The notes beneath the pieces were generated by a model. That model saw nothing but the letters and a program-made list of their open reading frames with translations. It made no database searches and was not told the DNA's origin. This document shows, in pieces, positions 9,681-63,990 of a stretch of 64,000 nucleotides of DNA. The stretch is from the IMG/VR virus record IMGVR_UViG_3300035070_002626, positions 124,001 to 188,000 of that record; one strand, written 5' to 3'. Position 1 is the stretch's first letter, and every line of letters begins with the position of its first letter. Made by a program: the position numbers and the translations under genes.

Positions 9681-11720
9681 TTACTTTGTCTGTGCTATGA
9701 AAACGCCATTCCAGTCTGAAGGAAGGTCTTGTGTTTTCATATACTCGCATCTTTCAATCCACATGTCGTAATATTTTTCCATTTGATGATCAAAGTGGTC
9801 ATGTAACAAGCGACATTTATCAATAGCATCATCGAATCTCTGCGCACGATAATCTTCGTGCATTTGTATGTGTTTCTTCTGCGCATTACGCCATGCCGGG
9901 GCAGTATTGTCGAGAACTGTGTAGATAGTTAATCCAACTGATTTACCTTTTACTTGTAAATCATCTACTTTAAGATAGAAGAAGTCATCCTTTGTTGCTG
10001 CGTATGTTGTTTCGCCTACAAGTAACAGGCATCCGTATTCTTTACACTTGCTTTCTACTCTTGCTGCGGTGCTCACAGCGTCTCCAAGGACATCATATGA
10101 ATGACGTTTAGTACTTCCCATCTCACCAAGGTATCCCAACCCCGTGTTGATGCCAGCGCCCATACCAACAGCAGGACGGCCATCAGGTATAATAACTTCT
10201 TCATTAAACTTCTCCACTGCACGAAGCATGTCTAAGCCACACTGTACGGCGGTCTTAGCATGTTTAGCGTCATCTATAGGCGCATTATGTATGTGCATAC
10301 TAGCATCGCCGATGTATTTAATTATCATTCCGTCCGCATCAAGCACAGGTTGTGTAATGCTGTCCATGTAGCCGTTCATAATAGTTGTCAGACCTTTTAC
10401 ATCATCACCAAAACTTTCACCCAATGGAGTAAAGCCACGCAAGTCACTAAACACAATAGAGACTTCTTTCTTTTGCCCGTCTTTAATTAGACTTGGATTT
10501 TCTTGTAGCAGTTTAACCACTGTAGGCGATGCGTATCCAGCAAACTGTTTCTTGATTGCTTGTTTCTCTAAAAACTCTTGTACAAACTTAATGCCATATA
10601 CTTGCAATGCTATTATAATAAACACTATAACAGGTGCTGTAACGTCTAAAAGAAACTTATCAGTTGCGTATGCGTATATGCTGTAAGGTATAACTCCGAC
10701 TATCATTGTAACAGTTGTAGCAAGCCCAACCCACATCCAACGACTTAATAATATAAGCAATAATCCGCCTACTACTAGTGCAACAAGCTCTGCTGTTGGT
10801 GCCCAATTGGGACGTTGTATGTTTGTACCAGCAAACATAGTGCCTAGTACTGCGGCTTGTGTAGTGCCTGCATACTGCGCTCCCAGTGCCGTGGGAACAG
10901 GGTTAGCAATGCCTGCGGCAGTAACGTCTACAATAACTACTGCACCTCCTAGATCATTAGGTAAGTCTGCAACACTTACATTCTTGCTACGTTGACTCCA
11001 ATCAATCCACACTCTACCCTCGCTGTCTGTAGGAATAACACCAAACTTTGGTATGCGCATTTTTTCTATACCAAACTGATTTAGTTTAATTTGAAAGTTG
11101 GGATCACCTGCAATGACTCGTAATGTCTCGAGCGCCAAGCTTGGATATAATGTGCCGTTTACAACAGCAACAGTTGGCATACGACGAACCACACCATCTA
11201 TCTCTGGTTCAGTGCTTACAATACCTGCACCCACTGAATTGTTTTCAAGTTCTGATATATTAGCAATAATACCACCATATGGCAAGATACGATCTAAGTA
11301 CTGAGGTTGGATAATTGCTGCGCCCGGATTAATTGGTTCGTTTACAGTTTTGTTACTAGGACGGCTAGCAAGTATAACCGGATAGTCTAACATAGTATCA
11401 GCTAGGTATGCATCTCCACCTAGTCTATCCTCTTCAGGCATCATTACATTCCACACAACCAATCCAGCACCTCTGTCGTACAAGTCTACAATAATGTCTG
11501 CGTATATGTCTCGGGGGAAAGGATACTGTCCGTACAGTTCTAGTGCTGCTTCGTCTATCTCTGCAACATAGATATTATTCTCTACTGCTGGTTGATTTAC
11601 AATAAGCTGATCAAAATAATTTAATTTAATACTTTGTATAAAGTTATTAGGTACTGCAAATGCATACACTAATGCAGCCAGTGTAATCAATGCCCACCAA
11701 GGAGATAATAATCGTTTCAT
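9681..11720 (-). CDS. CHASE2-domain class III adenylate cyclase
   Basis: N-terminal TM; CHASE2 (EIDE..L..YGQYPFPR, DGVVRR, PSLAL); 3 TMs; cyclase motifs FSDLRGFT, KYIGDA, GINTG, YDVLGDAVSTAARVES, VKGK. Confidence 0.95.
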   Translation of the reverse strand: MKRLLSPWWALITLAALVYAFAVPNNFIQSIKLNYFDQLIVNQPAVENNIYVAEIDEAALELYGQYPFPRDIYADIIVDLYDRGAGLVVWNVMMPEEDRLGGDAYLADTMLDYPVILASRPSNKTVNEPINPGAAIIQPQYLDRILPYGGIIANISELENNSVGAGIVSTEPEIDGVVRRMPTVAVVNGTLYPSLALETLRVIAGDPNFQIKLNQFGIEKMRIPKFGVIPTDSEGRVWIDWSQRSKNVSVADLPNDLGGAVVIVDVTAAGIANPVPTALGAQYAGTTQAAVLGTMFAGTNIQRPNWAPTAELVALVVGGLLLILLSRWMWVGLATTVTMIVGVIPYSIYAYATDKFLLDVTAPVIVFIIIALQVYGIKFVQEFLEKQAIKKQFAGYASPTVVKLLQENPSLIKDGQKKEVSIVFSDLRGFTPLGESFGDDVKGLTTIMNGYMDSITQPVLDADGMIIKYIGDASMHIHNAPIDDAKHAKTAVQCGLDMLRAVEKFNEEVIIPDGRPAVGMGAGINTGLGYLGEMGSTKRHSYDVLGDAVSTAARVESKCKEYGCLLLVGETTYAATKDDFFYLKVDDLQVKGKSVGLTIYTVLDNTAPAWRNAQKKHIQMHEDYRAQRFDDAIDKCRLLHDHFDHQMEKYYDMWIERCEYMKTQDLPSDWNGVFIAQTK

Positions 11721-17307: not shown

Positions 17308-17391
17308 TGGTACTCGCACCCGGACTCGAACCGGGACGCCCTACGGCCACAGATTTTAAGTCTGTTATGTCTACCATTCCATCATGCGAGC
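17308..17391 (-). tRNA. tRNA-Leu (TAA)
   Basis: GCTCGCA/TGCGAGT acceptor stem, ACAGA-CTTAAAA-TCTGT anticodon arm, long variable arm, GGTTCGAGTCC, encoded CCA. Confidence 0.95.
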
Positions 17392-17393
17392 GT

Positions 17394-17470
17394 TGGTGCT
17401 CCCGGTAGGACTCGAACCTACGACCGACCCGTTATGAGCGGGGCGCTCTAACCAACTGAGCTACAGGAGC
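17394..17470 (-). tRNA. tRNA with CAT anticodon, probably tRNA-Ile2 (lysidine) rather than Met
   Basis: GCTCCTG..TAGCTCAGTTGGTTAGAGC..CCCG-CTCATAA-CGGG..GGTTCGAGTCC..ACCA; lacks the initiator C1:A72 mismatch and GGG:CCC anticodon stem. Confidence 0.9.
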
Positions 17471-58338: not shown

Positions 58339-58367
58339 ATACTAGCACAGTGCAACAGCAATGTCAA
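58339..58367 (-). promoter_or_regulatory. Sigma70-type promoter
   Basis: TTGACA-N17-TAGTAT. Confidence 0.55.
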
Positions 58368-58368
58368 G

Positions 58369-58394
58369 AAAAAAGCACCCGCAAAGGTGCTTTT
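58369..58394. terminator. Bidirectional intrinsic terminator
   Basis: AAAAGCACC-CGCAAA-GGTGCTTTT. Confidence 0.75.
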
Positions 58395-58416: not shown

Positions 58417-59004
58417 TTACCAAGCGGACCATTTTGCTGGGCATCTGGCTGAGCACGTAAATACATCGCCTGCTTCTAGCCCAAAGAACCAACCAAGGTA
58501 TGTTGGAGCATCGCTAGGTCCTGTTGGTATATACCCTTCTGCAATCACTGGGGCAGATCCATTAATTAAAATGTTGCTTCTATCTGCAAAGTAATCATTT
58601 GGATCATCATCAGAAGTAAGTGTAGCATAACCCGGCCATGGATACGGTTTTAAAAACCCTGCGCCTACTAGATTAAAGCTCTCAGTGATACCTTTACTGC
58701 CTAATGATGCATCTTCGCTGTTTACTCCATCTGTGCTAAACCACAATGATCCGAGATTTAACGAACCCGAATTAACTGTTACACTTAATGTGTGTTCATG
58801 TAACGCACCGTCATCGTCATCTTCAAATGTCCAGGTTCCGATTAACTCGAAGCCTTCCTCATCATCTGGGCCCGGGCCAGCCCATACGCCATCTCTGGTA
58901 ACCGGAGTCACTGCACCTGTTTGCACTTCTGCGCCGTCCCAGAGGATGGTTAAATCTGCTGTTGATACACTTGTACCTAACAATTTTACTGTTCTTAATG
59001 CCAT
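58417..59004 (-). CDS. Acidic beta-rich hypothetical protein (monocistronic late gene)
   Basis: AGGA RBS, own terminator, structured leader. Confidence 0.7.
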   Translation of the reverse strand: MALRTVKLLGTSVSTADLTILWDGAEVQTGAVTPVTRDGVWAGPGPDDEEGFELIGTWTFEDDDDGALHEHTLSVTVNSGSLNLGSLWFSTDGVNSEDASLGSKGITESFNLVGAGFLKPYPWPGYATLTSDDDPNDYFADRSNILINGSAPVIAEGYIPTGPSDAPTYLGWFFGLEAGDVFTCSARCPAKWSAW

Positions 59005-59024
59005 ATTTATTTCCTAAACTTGTT

Positions 59025-59117
59025 TTACCTAGCCCGCAGTATTAGGCAGGCCGCTGTAGTGCGTAGCCTTGCCCGGTAATTGTACTAACACTACCCAACT
59101 GCGGCCGTTGTAGTGTT
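59025..59117 (-). ncRNA. Candidate structured RNA leader with a pseudoknot
   Basis: GC-rich intergenic region; two stem-loops; CCGCAGT/ACTGCGG long-range complement; 13-nt near-direct repeat. Confidence 0.5.
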
Positions 59118-59136
59118 TGTGTTATTATAATTGTAT

Positions 59137-59892
59137 TTAGCACCAATGTTGAGATATTATATTATCTTTAACTTCATGCGGTTTTGGATTTCCGTGAAAT
59201 ATTAGCACACTTGCTTCTGGCGGCACAACACTTGCAGCACCAGGGTCCTTATGTTTTCTATATCGAAAATCATATCCACCTTGCATTACTTGCCATCGAT
59301 AACTGAGAATCTGATCAGAATTATAAAACGCAACATTGTTTTTTACTTTTTCAAAAATGTAGTCTTGGTCTCCGTGCCACGGGCATCTTGGATTATTAAT
59401 AATCGAGTTTGGATCGAATTCATTGTATACATGTGCATAGTCCTTTGGATCAAACCACATTACACTACTGTTGATTGCCCATTTGCTACTTTTCATAAGA
59501 TATTTAAAATCTCGTGCGGCCCAAAATTTATCTTTGTTAACTTGCCACAACCAATCGATATTCCCTACAATGACAGTATCAAGATCAAAGTACAGCATTT
59601 TTCCTTGATCTTTTAAACAGTTTTGTGTGTTAAAGAGTTGTATCTTGTACCACCAACTGCGCTTAGGCCCCCTAACACCATCCCATTCTTCTAGTGCATG
59701 CTTGATGTAAGGTGCAGGTACGTGACGTGTACTTTCTGTGTACACATGCATTCTAACACTGGGTGTTAGGTTGCGGCATAGACTATTATAAAGTCTATCT
59801 ACATATGTCCAGTCATACAGTGTGTCATGTATTAAACATGCACAATCTATCACATCATCCACTCCAGTGAGTCGCTTAATCTTTTTAGCCAT
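59137..59892 (-). CDS. GT-A glycosyltransferase (GT8-like)
   Basis: WWYKIQLF, YFDLD, NSSVM, GDQDYI, FHGNPKPH. Confidence 0.85.
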   Translation of the reverse strand: MAKKIKRLTGVDDVIDCACLIHDTLYDWTYVDRLYNSLCRNLTPSVRMHVYTESTRHVPAPYIKHALEEWDGVRGPKRSWWYKIQLFNTQNCLKDQGKMLYFDLDTVIVGNIDWLWQVNKDKFWAARDFKYLMKSSKWAINSSVMWFDPKDYAHVYNEFDPNSIINNPRCPWHGDQDYIFEKVKNNVAFYNSDQILSYRWQVMQGGYDFRYRKHKDPGAASVVPPEASVLIFHGNPKPHEVKDNIISQHWC

Positions 59893-60725
59893 AATCCTTG
59901 TTCTATTTCTGGCACAGTGTATTCAGTGTGGCATATTTCTACAAACCATTGTTCTCTGTCCACTGGCTTAGGGTGTTCAATATTCTCCAAGTGTGTACTA
60001 ACTGGATGTGCAAGACTGCTCGAATTGGTTAGCACATTTGCGCCAGCAATTGCTGCACTAATGCCAGGGCCGCTACAGTGATTTACTACTGCATGATATC
60101 CGTAGTCAATGTTGTATTTGTCATAAGTGTCGTCCACTCGTATAGGTTGTTCCATTGTGCAGTTAGCAAAGTTTTCCAACATAAATCGATGTGGGGGGAT
60201 AAATGCAGGACTGCGTGGATGCGGCCTAACTACTATTGGCCGGTCTGTATACTTGCGTAGATGGGCAATAGTCTCTCTAGTCCAAGTTGGAAGATCGGGC
60301 ATGTTTTCCCATTGCAAACTTTTACGATGCTGCAATGCTATCAAAATACCATCACTTTGTTGTGATAACTTGCTTAGTTTTAATCCCAGGGCAGCTGGCC
60401 TATCCCAGTCTAAATTTTGTTGATGTCCGTAATAGCCAGTGGCATTGATATTGTTAATTGCTATCTTCCATGTTACCTCACGATCGAGTGCCCCAACATC
60501 AATCACAATAACTGGTTTGTTTTGGCTGCGATAATGGTCGTATACTTGTTTGTTCTTTGCCATACGCCCATTCCACAGTACACTCCATATTACAACAGCA
60601 TCACAATCTAAACTATTTTCAACTGGCGTTATACCTGCTGCTCTACAACTACTGAGAAATGCTTCCAGCACTGTAGAGCTGTTCAGTGCACACTGTTCTG
60701 GATAATATGCTATGTTAATGATCAT
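59850..60725 (-). CDS. Capsule-biosynthesis-like (KpsC/KpsS-type) GT-B protein
   Basis: ILIALQ, RPIVVRPHP, S...I.A.I.G, Y...EI..G. Confidence 0.65.
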   Translation of the reverse strand: MIINIAYYPEQCALNSSTVLEAFLSSCRAAGITPVENSLDCDAVVIWSVLWNGRMAKNKQVYDHYRSQNKPVIVIDVGALDREVTWKIAINNINATGYYGHQQNLDWDRPAALGLKLSKLSQQSDGILIALQHRKSLQWENMPDLPTWTRETIAHLRKYTDRPIVVRPHPRSPAFIPPHRFMLENFANCTMEQPIRVDDTYDKYNIDYGYHAVVNHCSGPGISAAIAGANVLTNSSSLAHPVSTHLENIEHPKPVDREQWFVEICHTEYTVPEIEQGLWLKRLSDSLEWMM

Positions 60726-60741
60726 GGTTATAAATACTCGT

Positions 60742-61572
60742 ATGAAACGTTATACAGTAGTTACCACATTTCATCAGGAGGGCTTGGAATTGTACGGCCA
60801 GCGGATGATTGATTCATTTGAGCAGCATTGGCCCGACAGTGTCGATATGATTGTTTACACAGAAAATTGCACTCCAAGAATAACCAAGAAAAATATACGT
60901 TGTGTTGATCTACTTAGTGTTAGCAGCGAGTGCAAAAGTTTTGTTGAAAGACACAAAAACAACCCGGAAGCACACGGTGGATTAGGTCCTCACAATCAAG
61001 GGGAATGGAGTGAACGCAAGCACTTTAAATGGCAAGGTGTGAGATTTTGTTACAAAGTATTTGCAGTACACCACGCAGTAAACACGGTTGACAGCGATTG
61101 GATTATTTGGTTAGACGCAGACAGTCACACCCATAGCCCATTAAGTGTTGAATTTTTAGACAGCATTAGCCCAGATGATTTTATTGCAACCCACCTGGGA
61201 CGGACTGATAGATACCACAGCGAATGCGGATGGGTAGGGTACAATCGTCAACACCCATTGGGCATTGAGTTTGTTAATGACTTTGCCGGAATGTACATCA
61301 ACGACACCATGTTCAATGAACGTGAATGGCATGATAGTTACTTGTTTGATGTGCAGAGAAAACATTATCGAGATAGCAAAGGTGTAAGCTTTTATGATCT
61401 CAATCCCGAACCTGATACCAAGGGACTAGCAGGGCACCCGTTTATTAACAGCAAGCTAGGAATGTATTTGGATCACATGAAAGGTGATCGCAAACAACGT
61501 GGACACAGTAAAGCAAAAGAAGTTAGACTGCACAGCGACCACCCGTACTGGAAGAAGATTTTAAATGTATGA
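60742..61572 (+). CDS. GT-A glycosyltransferase
   Basis: RFCYKVFA, WLDAD, ECG, EWHDS, DHMKG.RK. Confidence 0.8.
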   Translation: MKRYTVVTTFHQEGLELYGQRMIDSFEQHWPDSVDMIVYTENCTPRITKKNIRCVDLLSVSSECKSFVERHKNNPEAHGGLGPHNQGEWSERKHFKWQGVRFCYKVFAVHHAVNTVDSDWIIWLDADSHTHSPLSVEFLDSISPDDFIATHLGRTDRYHSECGWVGYNRQHPLGIEFVNDFAGMYINDTMFNEREWHDSYLFDVQRKHYRDSKGVSFYDLNPEPDTKGLAGHPFINSKLGMYLDHMKGDRKQRGHSKAKEVRLHSDHPYWKKILNV

Positions 61573-62215
61573 AAAACACAGCTGGTGGTTTCCAGACCAA
61601 GATACACACTTTGTAGAAATGCTGGATAAGAATATACACAAAGGTTTTGAGCCAGTGTATCAAGAACCTGTGCGCAATAAAAGTTTACGATATGTAAAGC
61701 AAAAAAGTGTTGCACTTGATATTGGGGCAAACATTGGCTTGTGGAGTAGGGACCTTGCACTGCATTTTACAAAAGTTATTGCATTTGAACCAGTAAGCGA
61801 CTTTCGTGATTGTTTGATTAAAAATGTTGTTAACGGCAATATAGACATTCGACCTTATGCACTAGGGCCAGAAGACACAACCATTGACATGGTTGTTACC
61901 GAAGGTAACACTGGCCACAGTCATGTTGACAACAATACAATTGGCAGCGGATCCATTGACATGCGCAAGTTGGATAGTTTGAAATTTGATGCTGTTGATT
62001 ATATTAAAATTGACTGTGAAGGATATGAGCTATCCATACTACAAGGTGCAGAGCAAACTATTAAACATCATCAACCTGTGATTGTAGTTGAACAAAAACT
62101 ACACAAAGATACCGGCATAACCAAAGAAACACAATATGGCAGTGTTGAATTACTAAAAAGTTGGGGCATGATTGAACTGGCCAGAGTGAGAAACGACTGT
62201 ATACTAGGCTGGTAA
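61565..62215 (+). CDS. FkbM-family methyltransferase
   Basis: LDIGANIGLWS, AFEP, LDS, IKIDCEGYE. Confidence 0.92.
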   Translation: MYEKHSWWFPDQDTHFVEMLDKNIHKGFEPVYQEPVRNKSLRYVKQKSVALDIGANIGLWSRDLALHFTKVIAFEPVSDFRDCLIKNVVNGNIDIRPYALGPEDTTIDMVVTEGNTGHSHVDNNTIGSGSIDMRKLDSLKFDAVDYIKIDCEGYELSILQGAEQTIKHHQPVIVVEQKLHKDTGITKETQYGSVELLKSWGMIELARVRNDCILGW

Positions 62216-63139
62216 GTGCGGTTCAAAGTGTCGATATATTTCACCATTTTGACTTTGTGCAATAGTCCAATGTGCTTGACATAAATTATTCAACCACTGT
62301 TCTCTGTCCGGCATTTGAGGATTGTTAATATTTCTAGTATTATGATTTGCAACGTCCCAAGTAACTGCACTTTCTTCATTGATAAATGTTGGTACACCTT
62401 CCAATACACTCAATACACTGCTCGAGCTGTTGTAAAATACCGCAGCCCTGGCGCCCTTAACATCTTGTTGAAGTGTGCGCTTGGTACTATCAACAATGTC
62501 AACGTGTTGTTGTCGGCCGATTAATTCTGCCCATGGTTTGTCCATAGTACCTGGATGTGGGCGTATTTTAATAACAGTGCCAACTTGACTGCGTATAATT
62601 TTTAATGTTTTTTGTAGCCAAGCTATTTGGTCAAATCCTTTAGCATTCCAGCCGTTATCACGCTGCAAGCATAATAAAATATGATCACCATAATTTTTCC
62701 ACGGCTTTAATTCAAGTCCTAATGTATCACGCACCATATGCCAGTGATTATGATTGCTGTTACTGTTAGCATATTCACCTTCGTTGTAAAACACACTGTC
62801 AAGGCTGTAACGCAACCACATGTTTTCGTGCTCATTGTGAAACTTAAAGCAACTTCCATCAATGCTCATAACTCTGCCGCCAATTGCCTTTTGATGATTA
62901 ATAATAGCTTCTCTATGATAAATGTGCGGACCACTATAGCTCATACCGACCCACCCAATGATTACTGCTAGTTTTGCACGATGTAATTGCCGATCACGCA
63001 AATTTTCATCAACCAACACACGGGCACCACATTGTCTTGCGCCGTCTGCAAATGCTCGCATGATCTGTACTTTAATATTATGATTGCGAATCTTCGGAAG
63101 ACTGCTCAAGTACACAACAACATCATAATCCCACGTCAT
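62204..63139 (-). CDS. Capsule-biosynthesis-like GT-B protein
   Basis: HILLCLQ, IKIRPHP, YNSS..V..VLEGVP, DREQW, W...Q..G. Confidence 0.65.
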   Translation of the reverse strand: MTWDYDVVVYLSSLPKIRNHNIKVQIMRAFADGARQCGARVLVDENLRDRQLHRAKLAVIIGWVGMSYSGPHIYHREAIINHQKAIGGRVMSIDGSCFKFHNEHENMWLRYSLDSVFYNEGEYANSNSNHNHWHMVRDTLGLELKPWKNYGDHILLCLQRDNGWNAKGFDQIAWLQKTLKIIRSQVGTVIKIRPHPGTMDKPWAELIGRQQHVDIVDSTKRTLQQDVKGARAAVFYNSSSSVLSVLEGVPTFINEESAVTWDVANHNTRNINNPQMPDREQWLNNLCQAHWTIAQSQNGEIYRHFEPHLPA

Positions 63140-63990
63140 CTGCTGTAGTTCTCCTGCAAAATATGCCAGGCGGTGCCTTCCTGCATTTCTTTAGGTGTAA
63201 ATTGATTGTATGCTAAATTGCAACAAAGATTTCTAACTTCGGGTATAGACGGCATGTAAGGAGTTGCAATTTTCTTTAAGTCTGTGTTAGCCAATGGCTG
63301 CGCTGCATTTGGTCCCATTGTGAACACAGGCTTTCCAAATATCAATGCTTCTACCGCAGCAATACTGTTGTAAGTTACCAAACAGTGCACATCTTGAGAT
63401 AGTGCCATTTCCATTGTGTCCACATTAACACGAGCATGTCGGCTTTGTTTTTCCCTGACTACAATAGGCCTGTCAGTGTGCTGTTTAATTTCGTTGATTG
63501 TTGTTTCTACCCATTCTGTTAAATCTACACCCCAATAAGACAGTGCTTTTTGACTAGGAGGACACAGCAAGATATTTCTCCCTGGAAGATGTCTGTTAAT
63601 TGTAACACCTGTTTTGAGAAATCTATCATCTTGGCACTGTTGGTATAATGGTGCACTATATTGCAATGCATTTTTAGTAATTCGGTGATATTTTTTATGC
63701 TTGCCGTTGCCAAAATAGCCAGTGTCAATGTAATAAAAATCTCGCTTTTCTTCTAAGCATCTATGTATTACTTTCTTTTTAGCAATACCTCTTACTACAA
63801 CCGGCACTGACAAATCAGTTAATTCTACGTGCTTGCTTGCTCCAAACACTCCGTTGGACCCTAATAAAAAACTCTCTACTATTACATCCAACTTTGATTC
63901 TCCTTTTGGTTGAGTAACGCCAGCATCAACAATGCCCATACAGCCCGGGGTATTATGAGATTGTATTATACGTTCAATGATGTTGTCCAT
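63136..63990 (-). CDS. Capsule-biosynthesis-like GT-B protein
   Basis: YIDTGY, ILLCPPS, RPIVVREK, TYNSIAAVEA..GKP, NQF...EM..G; start may lie at or beyond the window edge. Confidence 0.65.
   Translation of the reverse strand: MDNIIERIIQSHNTPGCMGIVDAGVTQPKGESKLDVIVESFLLGSNGVFGASKHVELTDLSVPVVVRGIAKKKVIHRCLEEKRDFYYIDTGYFGNGKHKKYHRITKNALQYSAPLYQQCQDDRFLKTGVTINRHLPGRNILLCPPSQKALSYWGVDLTEWVETTINEIKQHTDRPIVVREKQSRHARVNVDTMEMALSQDVHCLVTYNSIAAVEALIFGKPVFTMGPNAAQPLANTDLKKIATPYMPSIPEVRNLCCNLAYNQFTPKEMQEGTAWHILQENYSR

What the first reader, a model, noticed from the sequence alone, without database searches (positions are those of the whole stretch)
59005..59140. GC-rich pseudoknotted 5' leader of an orphan late gene: candidate novel riboregulator
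Seen on the minus strand after a TAAATA element: hairpin AACACUA-CAAC-[GGCCGCA]-GUUG-GG-UAGUGUU; then a domain closed by UUACC/GGUAA with an inner GGCA..GGC/GCC..UGCC stem; a 7-nt CCGCAGU/ACUGCGG complement links the first loop region to the second domain; and a 13-nt near-repeat CACUACARCGGCC occurs twice. I could not match it to a known riboswitch or ribozyme. Inference: a riboswitch, ribozyme or protein-binding autoregulatory element.
Basis: partly seen in the sequence, partly recalled or inferred. Interest (0 to 1): 0.65.

Follow-up and report, generated by a model that had tools for sequence, protein, structure and literature searches.

The report
New pseudoknot RNA leading phage late gene
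The flagged stretch is a real, previously uncatalogued folded RNA (a pseudoknot with an extra hairpin) that a group of large aquatic phages keeps almost unchanged in front of a fast-evolving late gene, so it probably controls that gene, though what it senses is unknown.

Summary
The 132-nt spacer (59005-59136, minus strand) lies between a GT8-like glycosyltransferase gene and a 195-aa gene. It holds one copy of a ~90-nt RNA (59031-59121) that recurs at the same position in 31 distinct uncultured phage sequences.

Comparative analysis supports these parts:
- a P1 hairpin (8 of 9 pairs show compensatory changes);
- a 7-bp pseudoknot between the P1 loop and a 3' segment (6 of 7 pairs compensatory, three different sequence versions);
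- a conserved P2 hairpin;
- about 20 invariant unpaired bases.

No Rfam 15 family matches, even at E<=10. The motif was absent from 185,579 bacterial and archaeal reference genomes (exact-pattern scan for the commonest version). It occurs once per phage contig.

It follows a conserved T4-type late-promoter core (TAAATA). An A/U-rich tail, a Shine-Dalgarno site and a monocistronic gene come after it. That gene is hypervariable and probably carbohydrate-binding.

The gene is not an orphan.

Function is inferred. The element is most likely a cis-acting regulator of translation or stability that recognises a conserved ligand; riboswitch is my leading reading at about 0.35. No link to cAMP was found.

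The parts
59134..59139 (-). TAAATA core of a T4-type late promoter; overlaps the TAA stop of the glycosyltransferase gene
   Evidence: Nearly invariant in the 26 aligned leaders (A4). It is a full TATAAATA in L233. TATAAATAC also precedes other ORFs in the window. TATAAAT is used as the late promoter for the related phage Melnitz (PMC9004378).
59124..59129 (-). sigma70-like -10 hexamer TATAAT, with TCAACA 17 nt upstream; an alternative promoter reading
   Evidence: Consensus scan, 10 of 12 matches. The -35-like part lies in coding sequence, so its conservation is uninformative.
59110..59117 (-). P1 5' strand (AACACUAC)
   Evidence: Pairs with 59087-59094. 8 of 9 P1 pairs show changes on both sides across 31 sequences.
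59105..59106 (-). Invariant GG (loop L1 of the H-type pseudoknot)
   Evidence: GG in 31 of 31 sequences. The role is inferred: it either crosses the groove of the pseudoknot helix or pairs with the invariant CC.
59098..59104 (-). Pseudoknot 5' strand (CCGCAGU) inside the P1 loop
   Evidence: Pairs with 59034-59040. 6 of 7 pairs are compensatory. Three versions exist: CCGCAGU/ACUGCGG, AUACGGC/GCCGUAU and ACACGAC/GUCGUGU.
59087..59094 (-). P1 3' strand (GUAGUGUU)
59077..59086 (-). A/U-rich linker between P1 and P2
   Evidence: 10-15 nt in all copies. In the L010/L013/L044/L126 clade it is complementary to the ribosome-binding site over 10-13 bp. In the window clade it is not.
59075..59076 (-). 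Invariant CC immediately 5' of P2
   Evidence: CC in 31 of 31 sequences.
59044..59074 (-). P2 hairpin: GGGCA/UGCCU, GC/GC, internal loop UAC opposite G, GC/GC, variable loop
   Evidence: RNAalifold predicts it on the unfitted alignment. The fourth pair occurs as U-G, U-A and C-G. The terminal loop varies in length and sequence. A second distal version (GC UAAG N5-9 CGANN GC, 'type B') occurs in nine of the 31 copies.
59041..59043 (-). 3-nt joiner AAU between P2 and the pseudoknot 3' strand
   Evidence: AAY in most copies; GAU, GAA, UAU or AGAC in divergent ones.
59034..59040 (-). Pseudoknot 3' strand (ACUGCGG)
59015..59033 (-). A/U-rich, poorly conserved tail between the pseudoknot and the ribosome-binding site
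   Evidence: About 15-30 nt, variable in sequence. The scan found no terminator here.
59002..59014 (-). Shine-Dalgarno GGAAA (59014-59010) and the ATG start (59004-59002)
   Evidence: Nearly invariant in A4.
58417..59004 (-). Regulated gene: a 195-aa acidic beta-sandwich protein, hypervariable among relatives and possibly carbohydrate-binding
   Evidence: Homologues sit at the same position in all related loci. AlphaFold2 model pLDDT 76.5. Best fold match is a CBM60-like module, Z 6.0. Some homologues carry PF02839.
58363..58394 (-). Intrinsic terminator-like hairpin plus T run that closes the monocistronic unit
   Evidence: Read directly from the sequence. The same palindrome was flagged on the + strand.
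59137..59892 (-). Upstream GT8-like glycosyltransferase gene; the syntenic anchor used to find relatives

Best explanation
The element is a genuine, phage-specific structured RNA family. It is an H-type pseudoknot: a P1 hairpin whose loop pairs with a 3' segment, with a conserved hairpin P2 embedded in the long connecting loop. It sits at or near the 5' end of a T4-type late transcript.

I think it acts in cis on the single gene behind it. That gene is a hypervariable, probably carbohydrate-binding protein of the phage's glycosyltransferase-rich host-recognition region.

The mechanism I consider most likely is ligand-dependent control of translation initiation, riboswitch-like. The invariant unpaired bases (GG in the P1 loop, CC before P2, the UAC/G internal loop and the AAY joiner) would form a pocket whose occupancy stabilises the pseudoknot. 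The folded pseudoknot holds the A/U-rich linker and leaves the ribosome-binding site open. The unfolded leader lets upstream segments pair with or mask it.

Shown: the fold, its conservation, its position and its single-gene association.
Inferred: the transcript start, any effect on expression, and the existence and nature of a ligand.

My sub-estimates are about 0.95 that this is a selected RNA structure, about 0.7 that it regulates the downstream gene in cis, and about 0.35 that it is a small-molecule riboswitch.
For: - Covariation. 31 distinct copies; 93.1% of cells paired against 29-51% in slid controls; 0 of 500 shuffles reach the observed score; P1 8/9 and pseudoknot 6/7 pairs compensatory (earlier). 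RNAalifold finds the long-range helix and P2 on an unfitted alignment.
- Strand. G-U pairs (G50-U84 in 30 of 31; U53-G81 in 22 of 31) fit only the sense RNA.
- Conservation above neighbours. Leader 85-86% identical against 77% for the adjacent GT coding sequence and 62% for the downstream gene (L010 vs L013 and L044). There is an identity cliff at the start codon.
- Fixed position. The order is always late-promoter core, element, A/U tail, SD, ATG of the same gene family.
- Monocistronic unit with a terminator.
- No coding potential.
- Partial expression platform. In one clade the linker is complementary to the ribosome-binding site over 10-13 bp (-9 to -12 kcal/mol, z -3.4 to -6.2) and forms in the MFE fold.
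- Precedent. Riboswitch use (glutamine) is reported in the related Melnitz-like phages (PMC9004378).
Against: - No conserved expression platform. The anti-RBS complementarity is absent in the window's own clade and in the type-B copies. There is no terminator in the leader.
- The pseudoknot 3' strand lies roughly 15-30 nt upstream of the SD and does not overlap it.
- Only one gene family, of no evident metabolic function, is associated. There is one copy per genome and none in cellular genomes. That pattern is more typical of gene-specific protein operators than of metabolite riboswitches.
- Close relatives do without it, with leaders of 27-57 nt.
- No experimental or transcript data are available.
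Confidence: 0.4

Rival explanations
1. It is a protein- or ribosome-binding operator or enhancer, working like the T4 gene 32 leader. A 5'-proximal pseudoknot nucleates binding of a conserved phage or host protein (or recruits the 30S subunit as a standby or enhancer site). Binding then spreads over, or exposes, the unstructured A/U-rich tail that carries the ribosome-binding site.
For: - The layout matches the T4 gene 32 operator as I know it from the literature: late promoter, pseudoknot near +1, then an unstructured A/U-rich stretch of roughly 15-30 nt up to the SD.
- Association is strictly with one gene and one copy per genome, and the motif is phage-only.
- The phage belongs to the T4-like superfamily.
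Against: - The downstream protein is not an obvious RNA binder. It is very acidic and a beta-sandwich.
- That protein is hypervariable while the RNA is nearly invariant, so classical autoregulation is unlikely.
- No candidate binding protein was identified.
- The element is larger and more conserved in its loops than the simple gene 32 pseudoknot.
Confidence: 0.3
2. It is a constitutive 5'-terminal stabiliser. The compact pseudoknot at the very 5' end protects a highly expressed late mRNA from 5'-end-dependent decay, with no sensing function.
For: - In several divergent copies (L233, L235, L243, L244, L135) P1 begins 4-5 nt after TAAATA. That is the +1 predicted from T4 late-promoter spacing (the spacing is from general knowledge).
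- No conserved expression platform exists.
Against: - A simple hairpin would do the job. About 20 invariant unpaired bases, a conserved embedded hairpin and a maintained pseudoknot exceed what protection needs.
- In the window clade 10-16 unpaired nt would precede P1.
Confidence: 0.12
3. It is a small self-cleaving ribozyme that processes the leader or separates it from read-through transcripts of the glycosyltransferase gene.
For: - The pseudoknotted ~90-nt fold has few but strictly conserved bases.
- Presence is patchy among homologous loci, as is common for phage-borne self-cleaving ribozymes (general knowledge).
Against: - No match to any ribozyme model in Rfam 15, even at E<=10.
- The helix order differs from what I recall for pistol and HDV-like ribozymes (my comparison from memory).
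- Strict single-locus association.
Confidence: 0.07
4. The conservation acts at the DNA level. The spacer would be a recombination anchor bounding a hypervariable gene cassette, in the manner of the promoter-stem-loop cassettes of T4-type phages, and the RNA fold would be incidental.
For: An abrupt identity cliff at the start codon, with a nearly identical leader in front of proteins only 36% identical.
Against: - Compensatory double substitutions in two helices and strand-specific G-U pairs show selection on RNA pairing.
- One copy per contig, so there is no intragenomic partner.
- An anchor role could coexist with an RNA function but does not explain the covariation.
Confidence: 0.05

Closest known systems
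T4/T2 gene 32 mRNA autoregulatory pseudoknot
   Same: An H-type pseudoknot near the 5' end of a T4-type phage mRNA, followed by an unstructured A/U-rich stretch that carries the ribosome-binding site. Phage-only and tied to a single gene.
   Different: The downstream gene is not a single-strand-binding protein. The element is about three times larger, has an embedded conserved hairpin and many invariant loop bases. No sequence similarity is evident. Binding by any protein is untested.
preQ1-II riboswitch (and other H-type pseudoknot aptamers: SAM-II/V, preQ1-I, fluoride, guanidine-III)
   Same: The architecture: an H-type pseudoknot with a hairpin embedded in the long loop next to the 3' pseudoknot strand, conserved unpaired bases, and a 5'-UTR location.
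   Different: No Rfam model match. The 3' pseudoknot strand does not contain the SD. The gene association is unrelated to queuosine or any metabolite pathway. The motif is found only in phages.
Glutamine riboswitch (glnA RNA) reported in Melnitz-like and pelagimyophage genomes (PMC9004378)
   Same: A structured regulatory RNA carried by the same broad group of marine T4-like phages. This shows that the group uses riboswitch-type control.
   Different: A different fold and sequence. The glnA and Downstream-peptide models do not match the window or the element.
Pistol and HDV-like (theta) self-cleaving ribozymes of phages
   Same: Small pseudoknotted RNAs in which a hairpin loop pairs with a distal segment. 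They are common in phage and metagenome DNA and patchy in distribution.
   Different: The order of helices differs: here the 3' pseudoknot strand follows the second hairpin, and nothing conserved lies beyond it. No model match. Cleavage is untested.
Promoter-stem-loop (PeSL) mobile regulatory cassettes of T4-type phages
   Same: A conserved promoter-plus-structure module at the boundary of a hypervariable gene in a T4-like genome.
   Different: Single copy, a late rather than early promoter, a complex covarying pseudoknot rather than a simple stem-loop, and selection that is clearly at the RNA level.

Membership tests
Any Rfam 15 family (riboswitches, ribozymes, leaders, sRNAs) | Covariance-model score at or above the family's gathering threshold | tested here: not met
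   The window at gathering thresholds gave only two tRNAs. The 601-nt region at E<=10 gave no match at all. Five divergent loci at E<=5 gave no match overlapping the element.
Riboswitch (generic) | Conserved aptamer-like fold with covariation in a 5' UTR | tested here: met
   position between promoter core and SD
Riboswitch (generic) | Expression platform (terminator or SD-sequestering alternative pairing) coupled to the aptamer | tested here: inconclusive
   A 10-13-bp anti-RBS complementarity exists only in the L010/L013/L044/L126 clade. It is absent in the window clade and in type-B copies. There is no terminator.
Riboswitch (generic) | Direct, selective ligand binding that changes structure and expression | not testable with these tools
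   Needs in-line probing, SHAPE or ITC, plus reporter assays.
Riboswitch (generic) | Association with genes of a coherent metabolic or transport function | tested here: not met
   Always the same hypervariable beta-sandwich gene family. It has no metabolic annotation.
T4 gene 32-type autoregulatory pseudoknot | 5'-proximal H-type pseudoknot followed by an unstructured A/U-rich RBS region | tested here: met
   The transcript start is inferred from promoter spacing only.
T4 gene 32-type autoregulatory pseudoknot | The downstream gene encodes the nucleic-acid-binding protein that binds the leader | tested here: not met
   The protein is acidic, a beta-sandwich, CBM-like and hypervariable.
preQ1-II riboswitch | The SD lies within the 3' pseudoknot helix; queT/COG4708 gene context; model match | tested here: not met
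   The SD lies roughly 15-30 nt downstream of the pseudoknot. The gene context is different. There is no Rfam match.
Self-cleaving ribozymes (pistol, twister, hatchet, HDV-like) | Family consensus fold and conserved catalytic nucleotides | tested here: not met
   No Rfam hits. The helix order differs (comparison from memory).
Self-cleaving ribozymes (pistol, twister, hatchet, HDV-like) | Site-specific self-cleavage | not testable with these tools
   Needs an in vitro transcription and cleavage assay.
PeSL-type mobile regulatory cassette | Multiple dispersed copies per genome flanking variable genes | tested here: not met
   One covariance-model hit in the 64-kb window. One pattern match in each of the 300-kb and 316-kb contigs.

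The most novel reading that the evidence does not exclude
This is a new riboswitch class found only in phages. It would let large aquatic T4-like phages time or tune synthesis of a hypervariable receptor- or glycan-binding virion protein in response to an intracellular signal of late infection. One candidate signal is a nucleotide-derived messenger, such as the product of the phage's own CHASE2 cyclase, or a nucleotide-sugar linked to the neighbouring glycosyltransferases.
Probability: 0.3. Interest if true: 0.85.

Novelty: new variant of a known kind. Interest (0 to 1): 0.62.

Why it matters
Structured regulatory RNAs that phages own themselves, rather than borrow from hosts, are few. The classic case is the T4 gene 32 pseudoknot. 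Here a larger, strongly covarying pseudoknot is kept nearly invariant across marine, estuarine, saline-lake and freshwater phages. It sits in front of one of their fastest-evolving genes, inside the glycosyltransferase-rich region thought to govern host recognition.

If it senses a small molecule, it would be a riboswitch class with no cellular counterpart. It would also give a handle on how uncultured phages of streamlined aquatic bacteria time late gene expression.

If it binds a protein or the ribosome, it would be a second, independent example of gene-32-style leader control.

Either way the 31-sequence alignment and covariance model form a ready-made new RNA family. The motif is short enough for direct biochemical testing.

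Tried and rejected
- Cultured-phage relatives. Megablast of the locus and tblastn of the 195-aa protein against 50,697 phage records gave no match. The GT gene has only 25-31% identical relatives there. Homologues had to come from IMG/VR and metagenomes.
- Loose pattern scan of viral contigs. It gave 66 stretches, nearly all chance matches in GC-rich coding DNA. One look-alike, L094, in another phage type scores only 9.3 bits (E 1.9) with the model and lacks P2. I rejected it as a member.
- Genome scan of 185,579 species. It gave one hit, in a Pirellulaceae MAG, inside GC-rich sequence at 7.5 bits. I treat it as chance. The scan covers only the commonest pseudoknot version.
- Type-B pattern scan. 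It returned only copies of L124 plus chance hits.
- Universal anti-SD switch. Rejected as general: strong in one clade, and no better than shuffled sequence in the window clade and in most others.
- UUACC/GGUAA closing stem and CAAC/GUUG. Not conserved.
- GG-CC tertiary pair. Both dinucleotides are invariant, so covariation cannot test it. By my geometric reasoning it is hard to reconcile with a coaxial H-type pseudoknot, so I left it open.
- Conserved leader peptide. Rejected.
- Stop-codon read-through or frameshift stimulator for the GT gene. Rejected: a second in-frame stop follows three codons after the first, the spacing is 20 nt or more, and a promoter core lies in between (direct reading).
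- cAMP link. The cyclase has 123 relatives among viral contigs. The long motif-positive and motif-negative contigs could not be compared because only the 80 best loci are listed, so no association is shown.
- Function of the downstream protein. Pfam and PHROGs gave nothing. Foldseek gave nothing at E<=1e-3. There is only a weak CBM60-like match, Z 6.0.
- Complex prediction was not used. No protein-protein claim is made.

Full report
**Locus.** The flagged interval is the 132-nt spacer between two minus-strand genes. Upstream is a GT8-like glycosyltransferase gene (59137-59892; Pfam GT8 just below cut-off, PHROG glycosyltransferase 1.8e-24). Downstream is a 195-aa ORF (58417-59004) with no Pfam or PHROG match.

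The window is 39.8% GC. It comes from an uncultured large phage: IMG/VR contig 3300035070_002626, 299,910 bp, is 100% identical over this locus. Several proteins place it near the T4-like pelagimyophage/Melnitz group. The CHASE2 nucleotidyl cyclase is 53% identical to that of Methylophilales phage Melnitz and 34% to that of Pelagibacter phage HTVC008M. An AAA-type protein resembles proteins of many T4-like phages. There is no close relative among 50,697 deposited phage genomes.

**Checking the observation.** Alone they are not compelling. The leader folds only 2.5 sd better than shuffles, and a single 7-nt complement in 130 nt is roughly a coin-flip by chance (my estimate). Rfam 15 finds nothing here, at gathering thresholds or at E<=10.

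**Homologues.** The glycosyltransferase served as a syntenic anchor. 44 viral-contig loci were fetched, and the spacer after the gene was read in each.
- Most relatives (about 70% GT identity) have a short 27-57-nt spacer.
- The window clade, a 79-85% clade and two ~59% loci carry a ~125-nt spacer with the same element.

Further copies came from three sources:
- a metagenome pattern scan, which added about 17 distinct copies;
- a profile of the downstream protein, which retrieved five more divergent copies (L233, L235, L243, L244, L245);
- together these give 31 distinct sequences, from marine, estuarine, saline-lake and freshwater samples.

All copies share one arrangement: GT stop, TAAATA, element, A/U-rich tail, GGA-type SD, and the ATG of the same gene family.

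**Structure.** On a MAFFT alignment of 26 copies, my proposed structure gave 94.5% paired cells against 29-53% for slid controls. RNAalifold independently chose the long-range helix and P2.

A covariance model was built from P1 and P2 only. It finds exactly one copy in the window (59031-59121, 76 bits) and none in the loci with short spacers.

On the 31-sequence model alignment:
- P1 has 8 of 9 pairs with changes on both sides.
- The pseudoknot has 6 of 7 pairs compensatory. It exists in three versions: CCGCAGU/ACUGCGG, AUACGGC/GCCGUAU (with G-U variants) and ACACGAC/GUCGUGU.
- The fourth pair of P2 occurs as U-G, U-A and C-G.
- The P2 terminal loop varies freely in length and sequence.
- 0 of 500 shuffles reach the observed paired fraction or covariation score.
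- Frequent G-U pairs fix the functional strand as the sense RNA.

Invariant unpaired bases include GG before the pseudoknot strand, CC before P2, the UAC/G internal loop and much of the AAY joiner. The distal part of P2 comes in two versions. Type A is GC-UAC-GC-loop-GC-G-GC. Type B is GC-UAAG-N5-9-CGANN-GC (read).

The overall topology is an H-type pseudoknot with a hairpin embedded in the long loop.

UUACC/GGUAA exists only in the window itself. CAAC/GUUG uses loop bases that are conserved for the pseudoknot. The 13-nt repeat arises because, in the window clade only, the P2 loop plus 3' strand copies the P1 5' strand plus loop. Other clades have unrelated P2 loops. The repeat does allow an alternative pairing in that clade (seen in the MFE folds), but this is not conserved.

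**Context.** TAAATA is nearly invariant and is a full TATAAATA in L233. TATAAATAC precedes other ORFs in the window. TATAAAT was the motif used to call late promoters in the Melnitz genome (PMC9004378).

With T4 spacing (general knowledge), transcription would start 10-16 nt before P1 in the window clade and right at the base of P1 in several type-B copies. A hairpin plus T run follows the ORF, so the unit is monocistronic.

The downstream protein family is present in every related locus but is hypervariable. L010 and L119 leaders are 95% identical while their proteins are 36% identical. Nucleotide identity falls from about 93% to about 61% exactly at the ATG. In deeper comparisons the leader (85-86%) is better conserved than the neighbouring GT coding sequence (77%).

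The protein is acidic. AlphaFold2 gives a beta-sandwich (pLDDT 76.5). The best fold match is weak, a calcium-dependent carbohydrate-binding module (Z 6.0). Some homologues carry a CBM_5_12 Pfam hit.

With the flanking GT8 and FkbM methyltransferase genes, this resembles the glycosyltransferase-rich host-recognition cluster described for pelagimyophages (PMC7029224). That paper found no riboswitches with a profile scanner.

**Mechanism.** No leader peptide is conserved, and the scan found no terminator inside the leader.

One clade (L010/L013/L044/L126) has a 10-13-bp complementarity between the linker ahead of P2 and the SD/start region. It is much stronger than shuffles and is part of the MFE fold, so it is a plausible SD-sequestering platform. 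The window clade and the type-B copies lack it, so it is not the common mechanism.

The motif is single-copy. Its commonest version is absent from 185,579 bacterial and archaeal genomes.

I conclude with high confidence that this is a selected RNA structure in the late leader of this gene. I judge cis-regulation of translation or stability likely (about 0.7).

Among mechanisms, I rank them as follows:
- a ligand-sensing aptamer first (about 0.35), because of the many invariant unpaired bases and the partial platform;
- a protein- or ribosome-binding operator of the gene 32 type close behind (about 0.3);
- a constitutive 5' stabiliser;
- a self-cleaving ribozyme;
- a DNA-level recombination anchor, which the covariation argues against.

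Autoregulation by the downstream protein is unlikely, given its charge and variability. The cAMP suggestion has no specific support: the cyclase has 123 relatives among viral contigs, and I could not test co-occurrence with the motif.

**Novelty.** No Rfam 15 family matches the window copy or five divergent copies. Literature searches turned up only the glutamine riboswitch for this phage group.

The nearest analogues are architectural: the T4 gene 32 pseudoknot in position and layout, and preQ1-II in the H-type pseudoknot with an embedded hairpin. I file the element as a new RNA family of a known general kind, a pseudoknotted cis-acting leader, with function to be determined by experiment.

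Noticed in passing
window 9681-11720 (-): A CHASE2 sensor domain fused to a class III adenylate/guanylate cyclase domain. It is 53% identical to the Melnitz phage protein and 34% to that of Pelagibacter phage HTVC008M. 123 relatives occur in viral contigs, so this is a widespread phage-encoded membrane cyclase of unknown role.
   Followed up: partly
window 58417-59004 (-) and homologous loci L010, L118, L119, L134: There is an identity cliff exactly at the start codon. The GT 3' end and the leader are 92-95% identical, but the gene behind them is only about 61% identical in nucleotides and 36% in protein. The gene behaves as a swapped or rapidly diversifying cassette behind an ultra-conserved leader.
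   Followed up: partly
L023:3757-3852 and L025 (same position as the element): A different 96-nt leader occupies the same site in another clade. It is a long hairpin (AAUGCCUCC...GGUAGGCAUU) followed by a T run. It may be a terminator for the GT gene or an unrelated leader structure.
   Followed up: no
L010, L013, L044, L126 clade leaders (e.g. L010:3754-3899): The linker ahead of P2 (AUUAUUUCC) is complementary to the SD/start region (GGAAAUAAU) over 10-13 bp. The complementarity includes the invariant CC. It looks like a clade-specific SD-sequestering platform.
   Followed up: yes
window 17308-17470 (-): Two adjacent tRNA genes, Leu(UAA) and Met(CAU).
   Followed up: partly
window 58339-58394 (-): An intrinsic-terminator-like palindrome plus T run lies directly after the 195-aa ORF. 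It is followed at once by a near-consensus sigma70-type promoter (TTGACA, 17 nt, TAGTAT with an upstream TG) for a run of very small ORFs.
   Followed up: partly
window 59137-63990: A glycan-modification island: a GT8-like transferase, an FkbM-family methyltransferase (61565-62215 +) and several unannotated ORFs. It resembles the glycosyltransferase-rich host-recognition cluster described for pelagimyophages.
   Followed up: partly
L094:976-1047 (-), contig IMGVR_UViG_3300009146_000001: An intergenic look-alike in a GC-richer 76-kb phage contig. It has a 7-bp hairpin whose loop contains CCGCAGU, then CCGGGUAGCUAAGUC, then ACUGCGG, but no P2. It scores only 9.3 bits with the model, so it is probably chance, though it could be a minimal variant.
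   Followed up: partly
contigs behind L013, L040, L046/L243, L238 and the window: Several contigs of this phage group are 300-343 kb, more than twice the 141-147 kb of Melnitz and HTVC008M. They are either true jumbo relatives or concatemeric assemblies.
   Followed up: no
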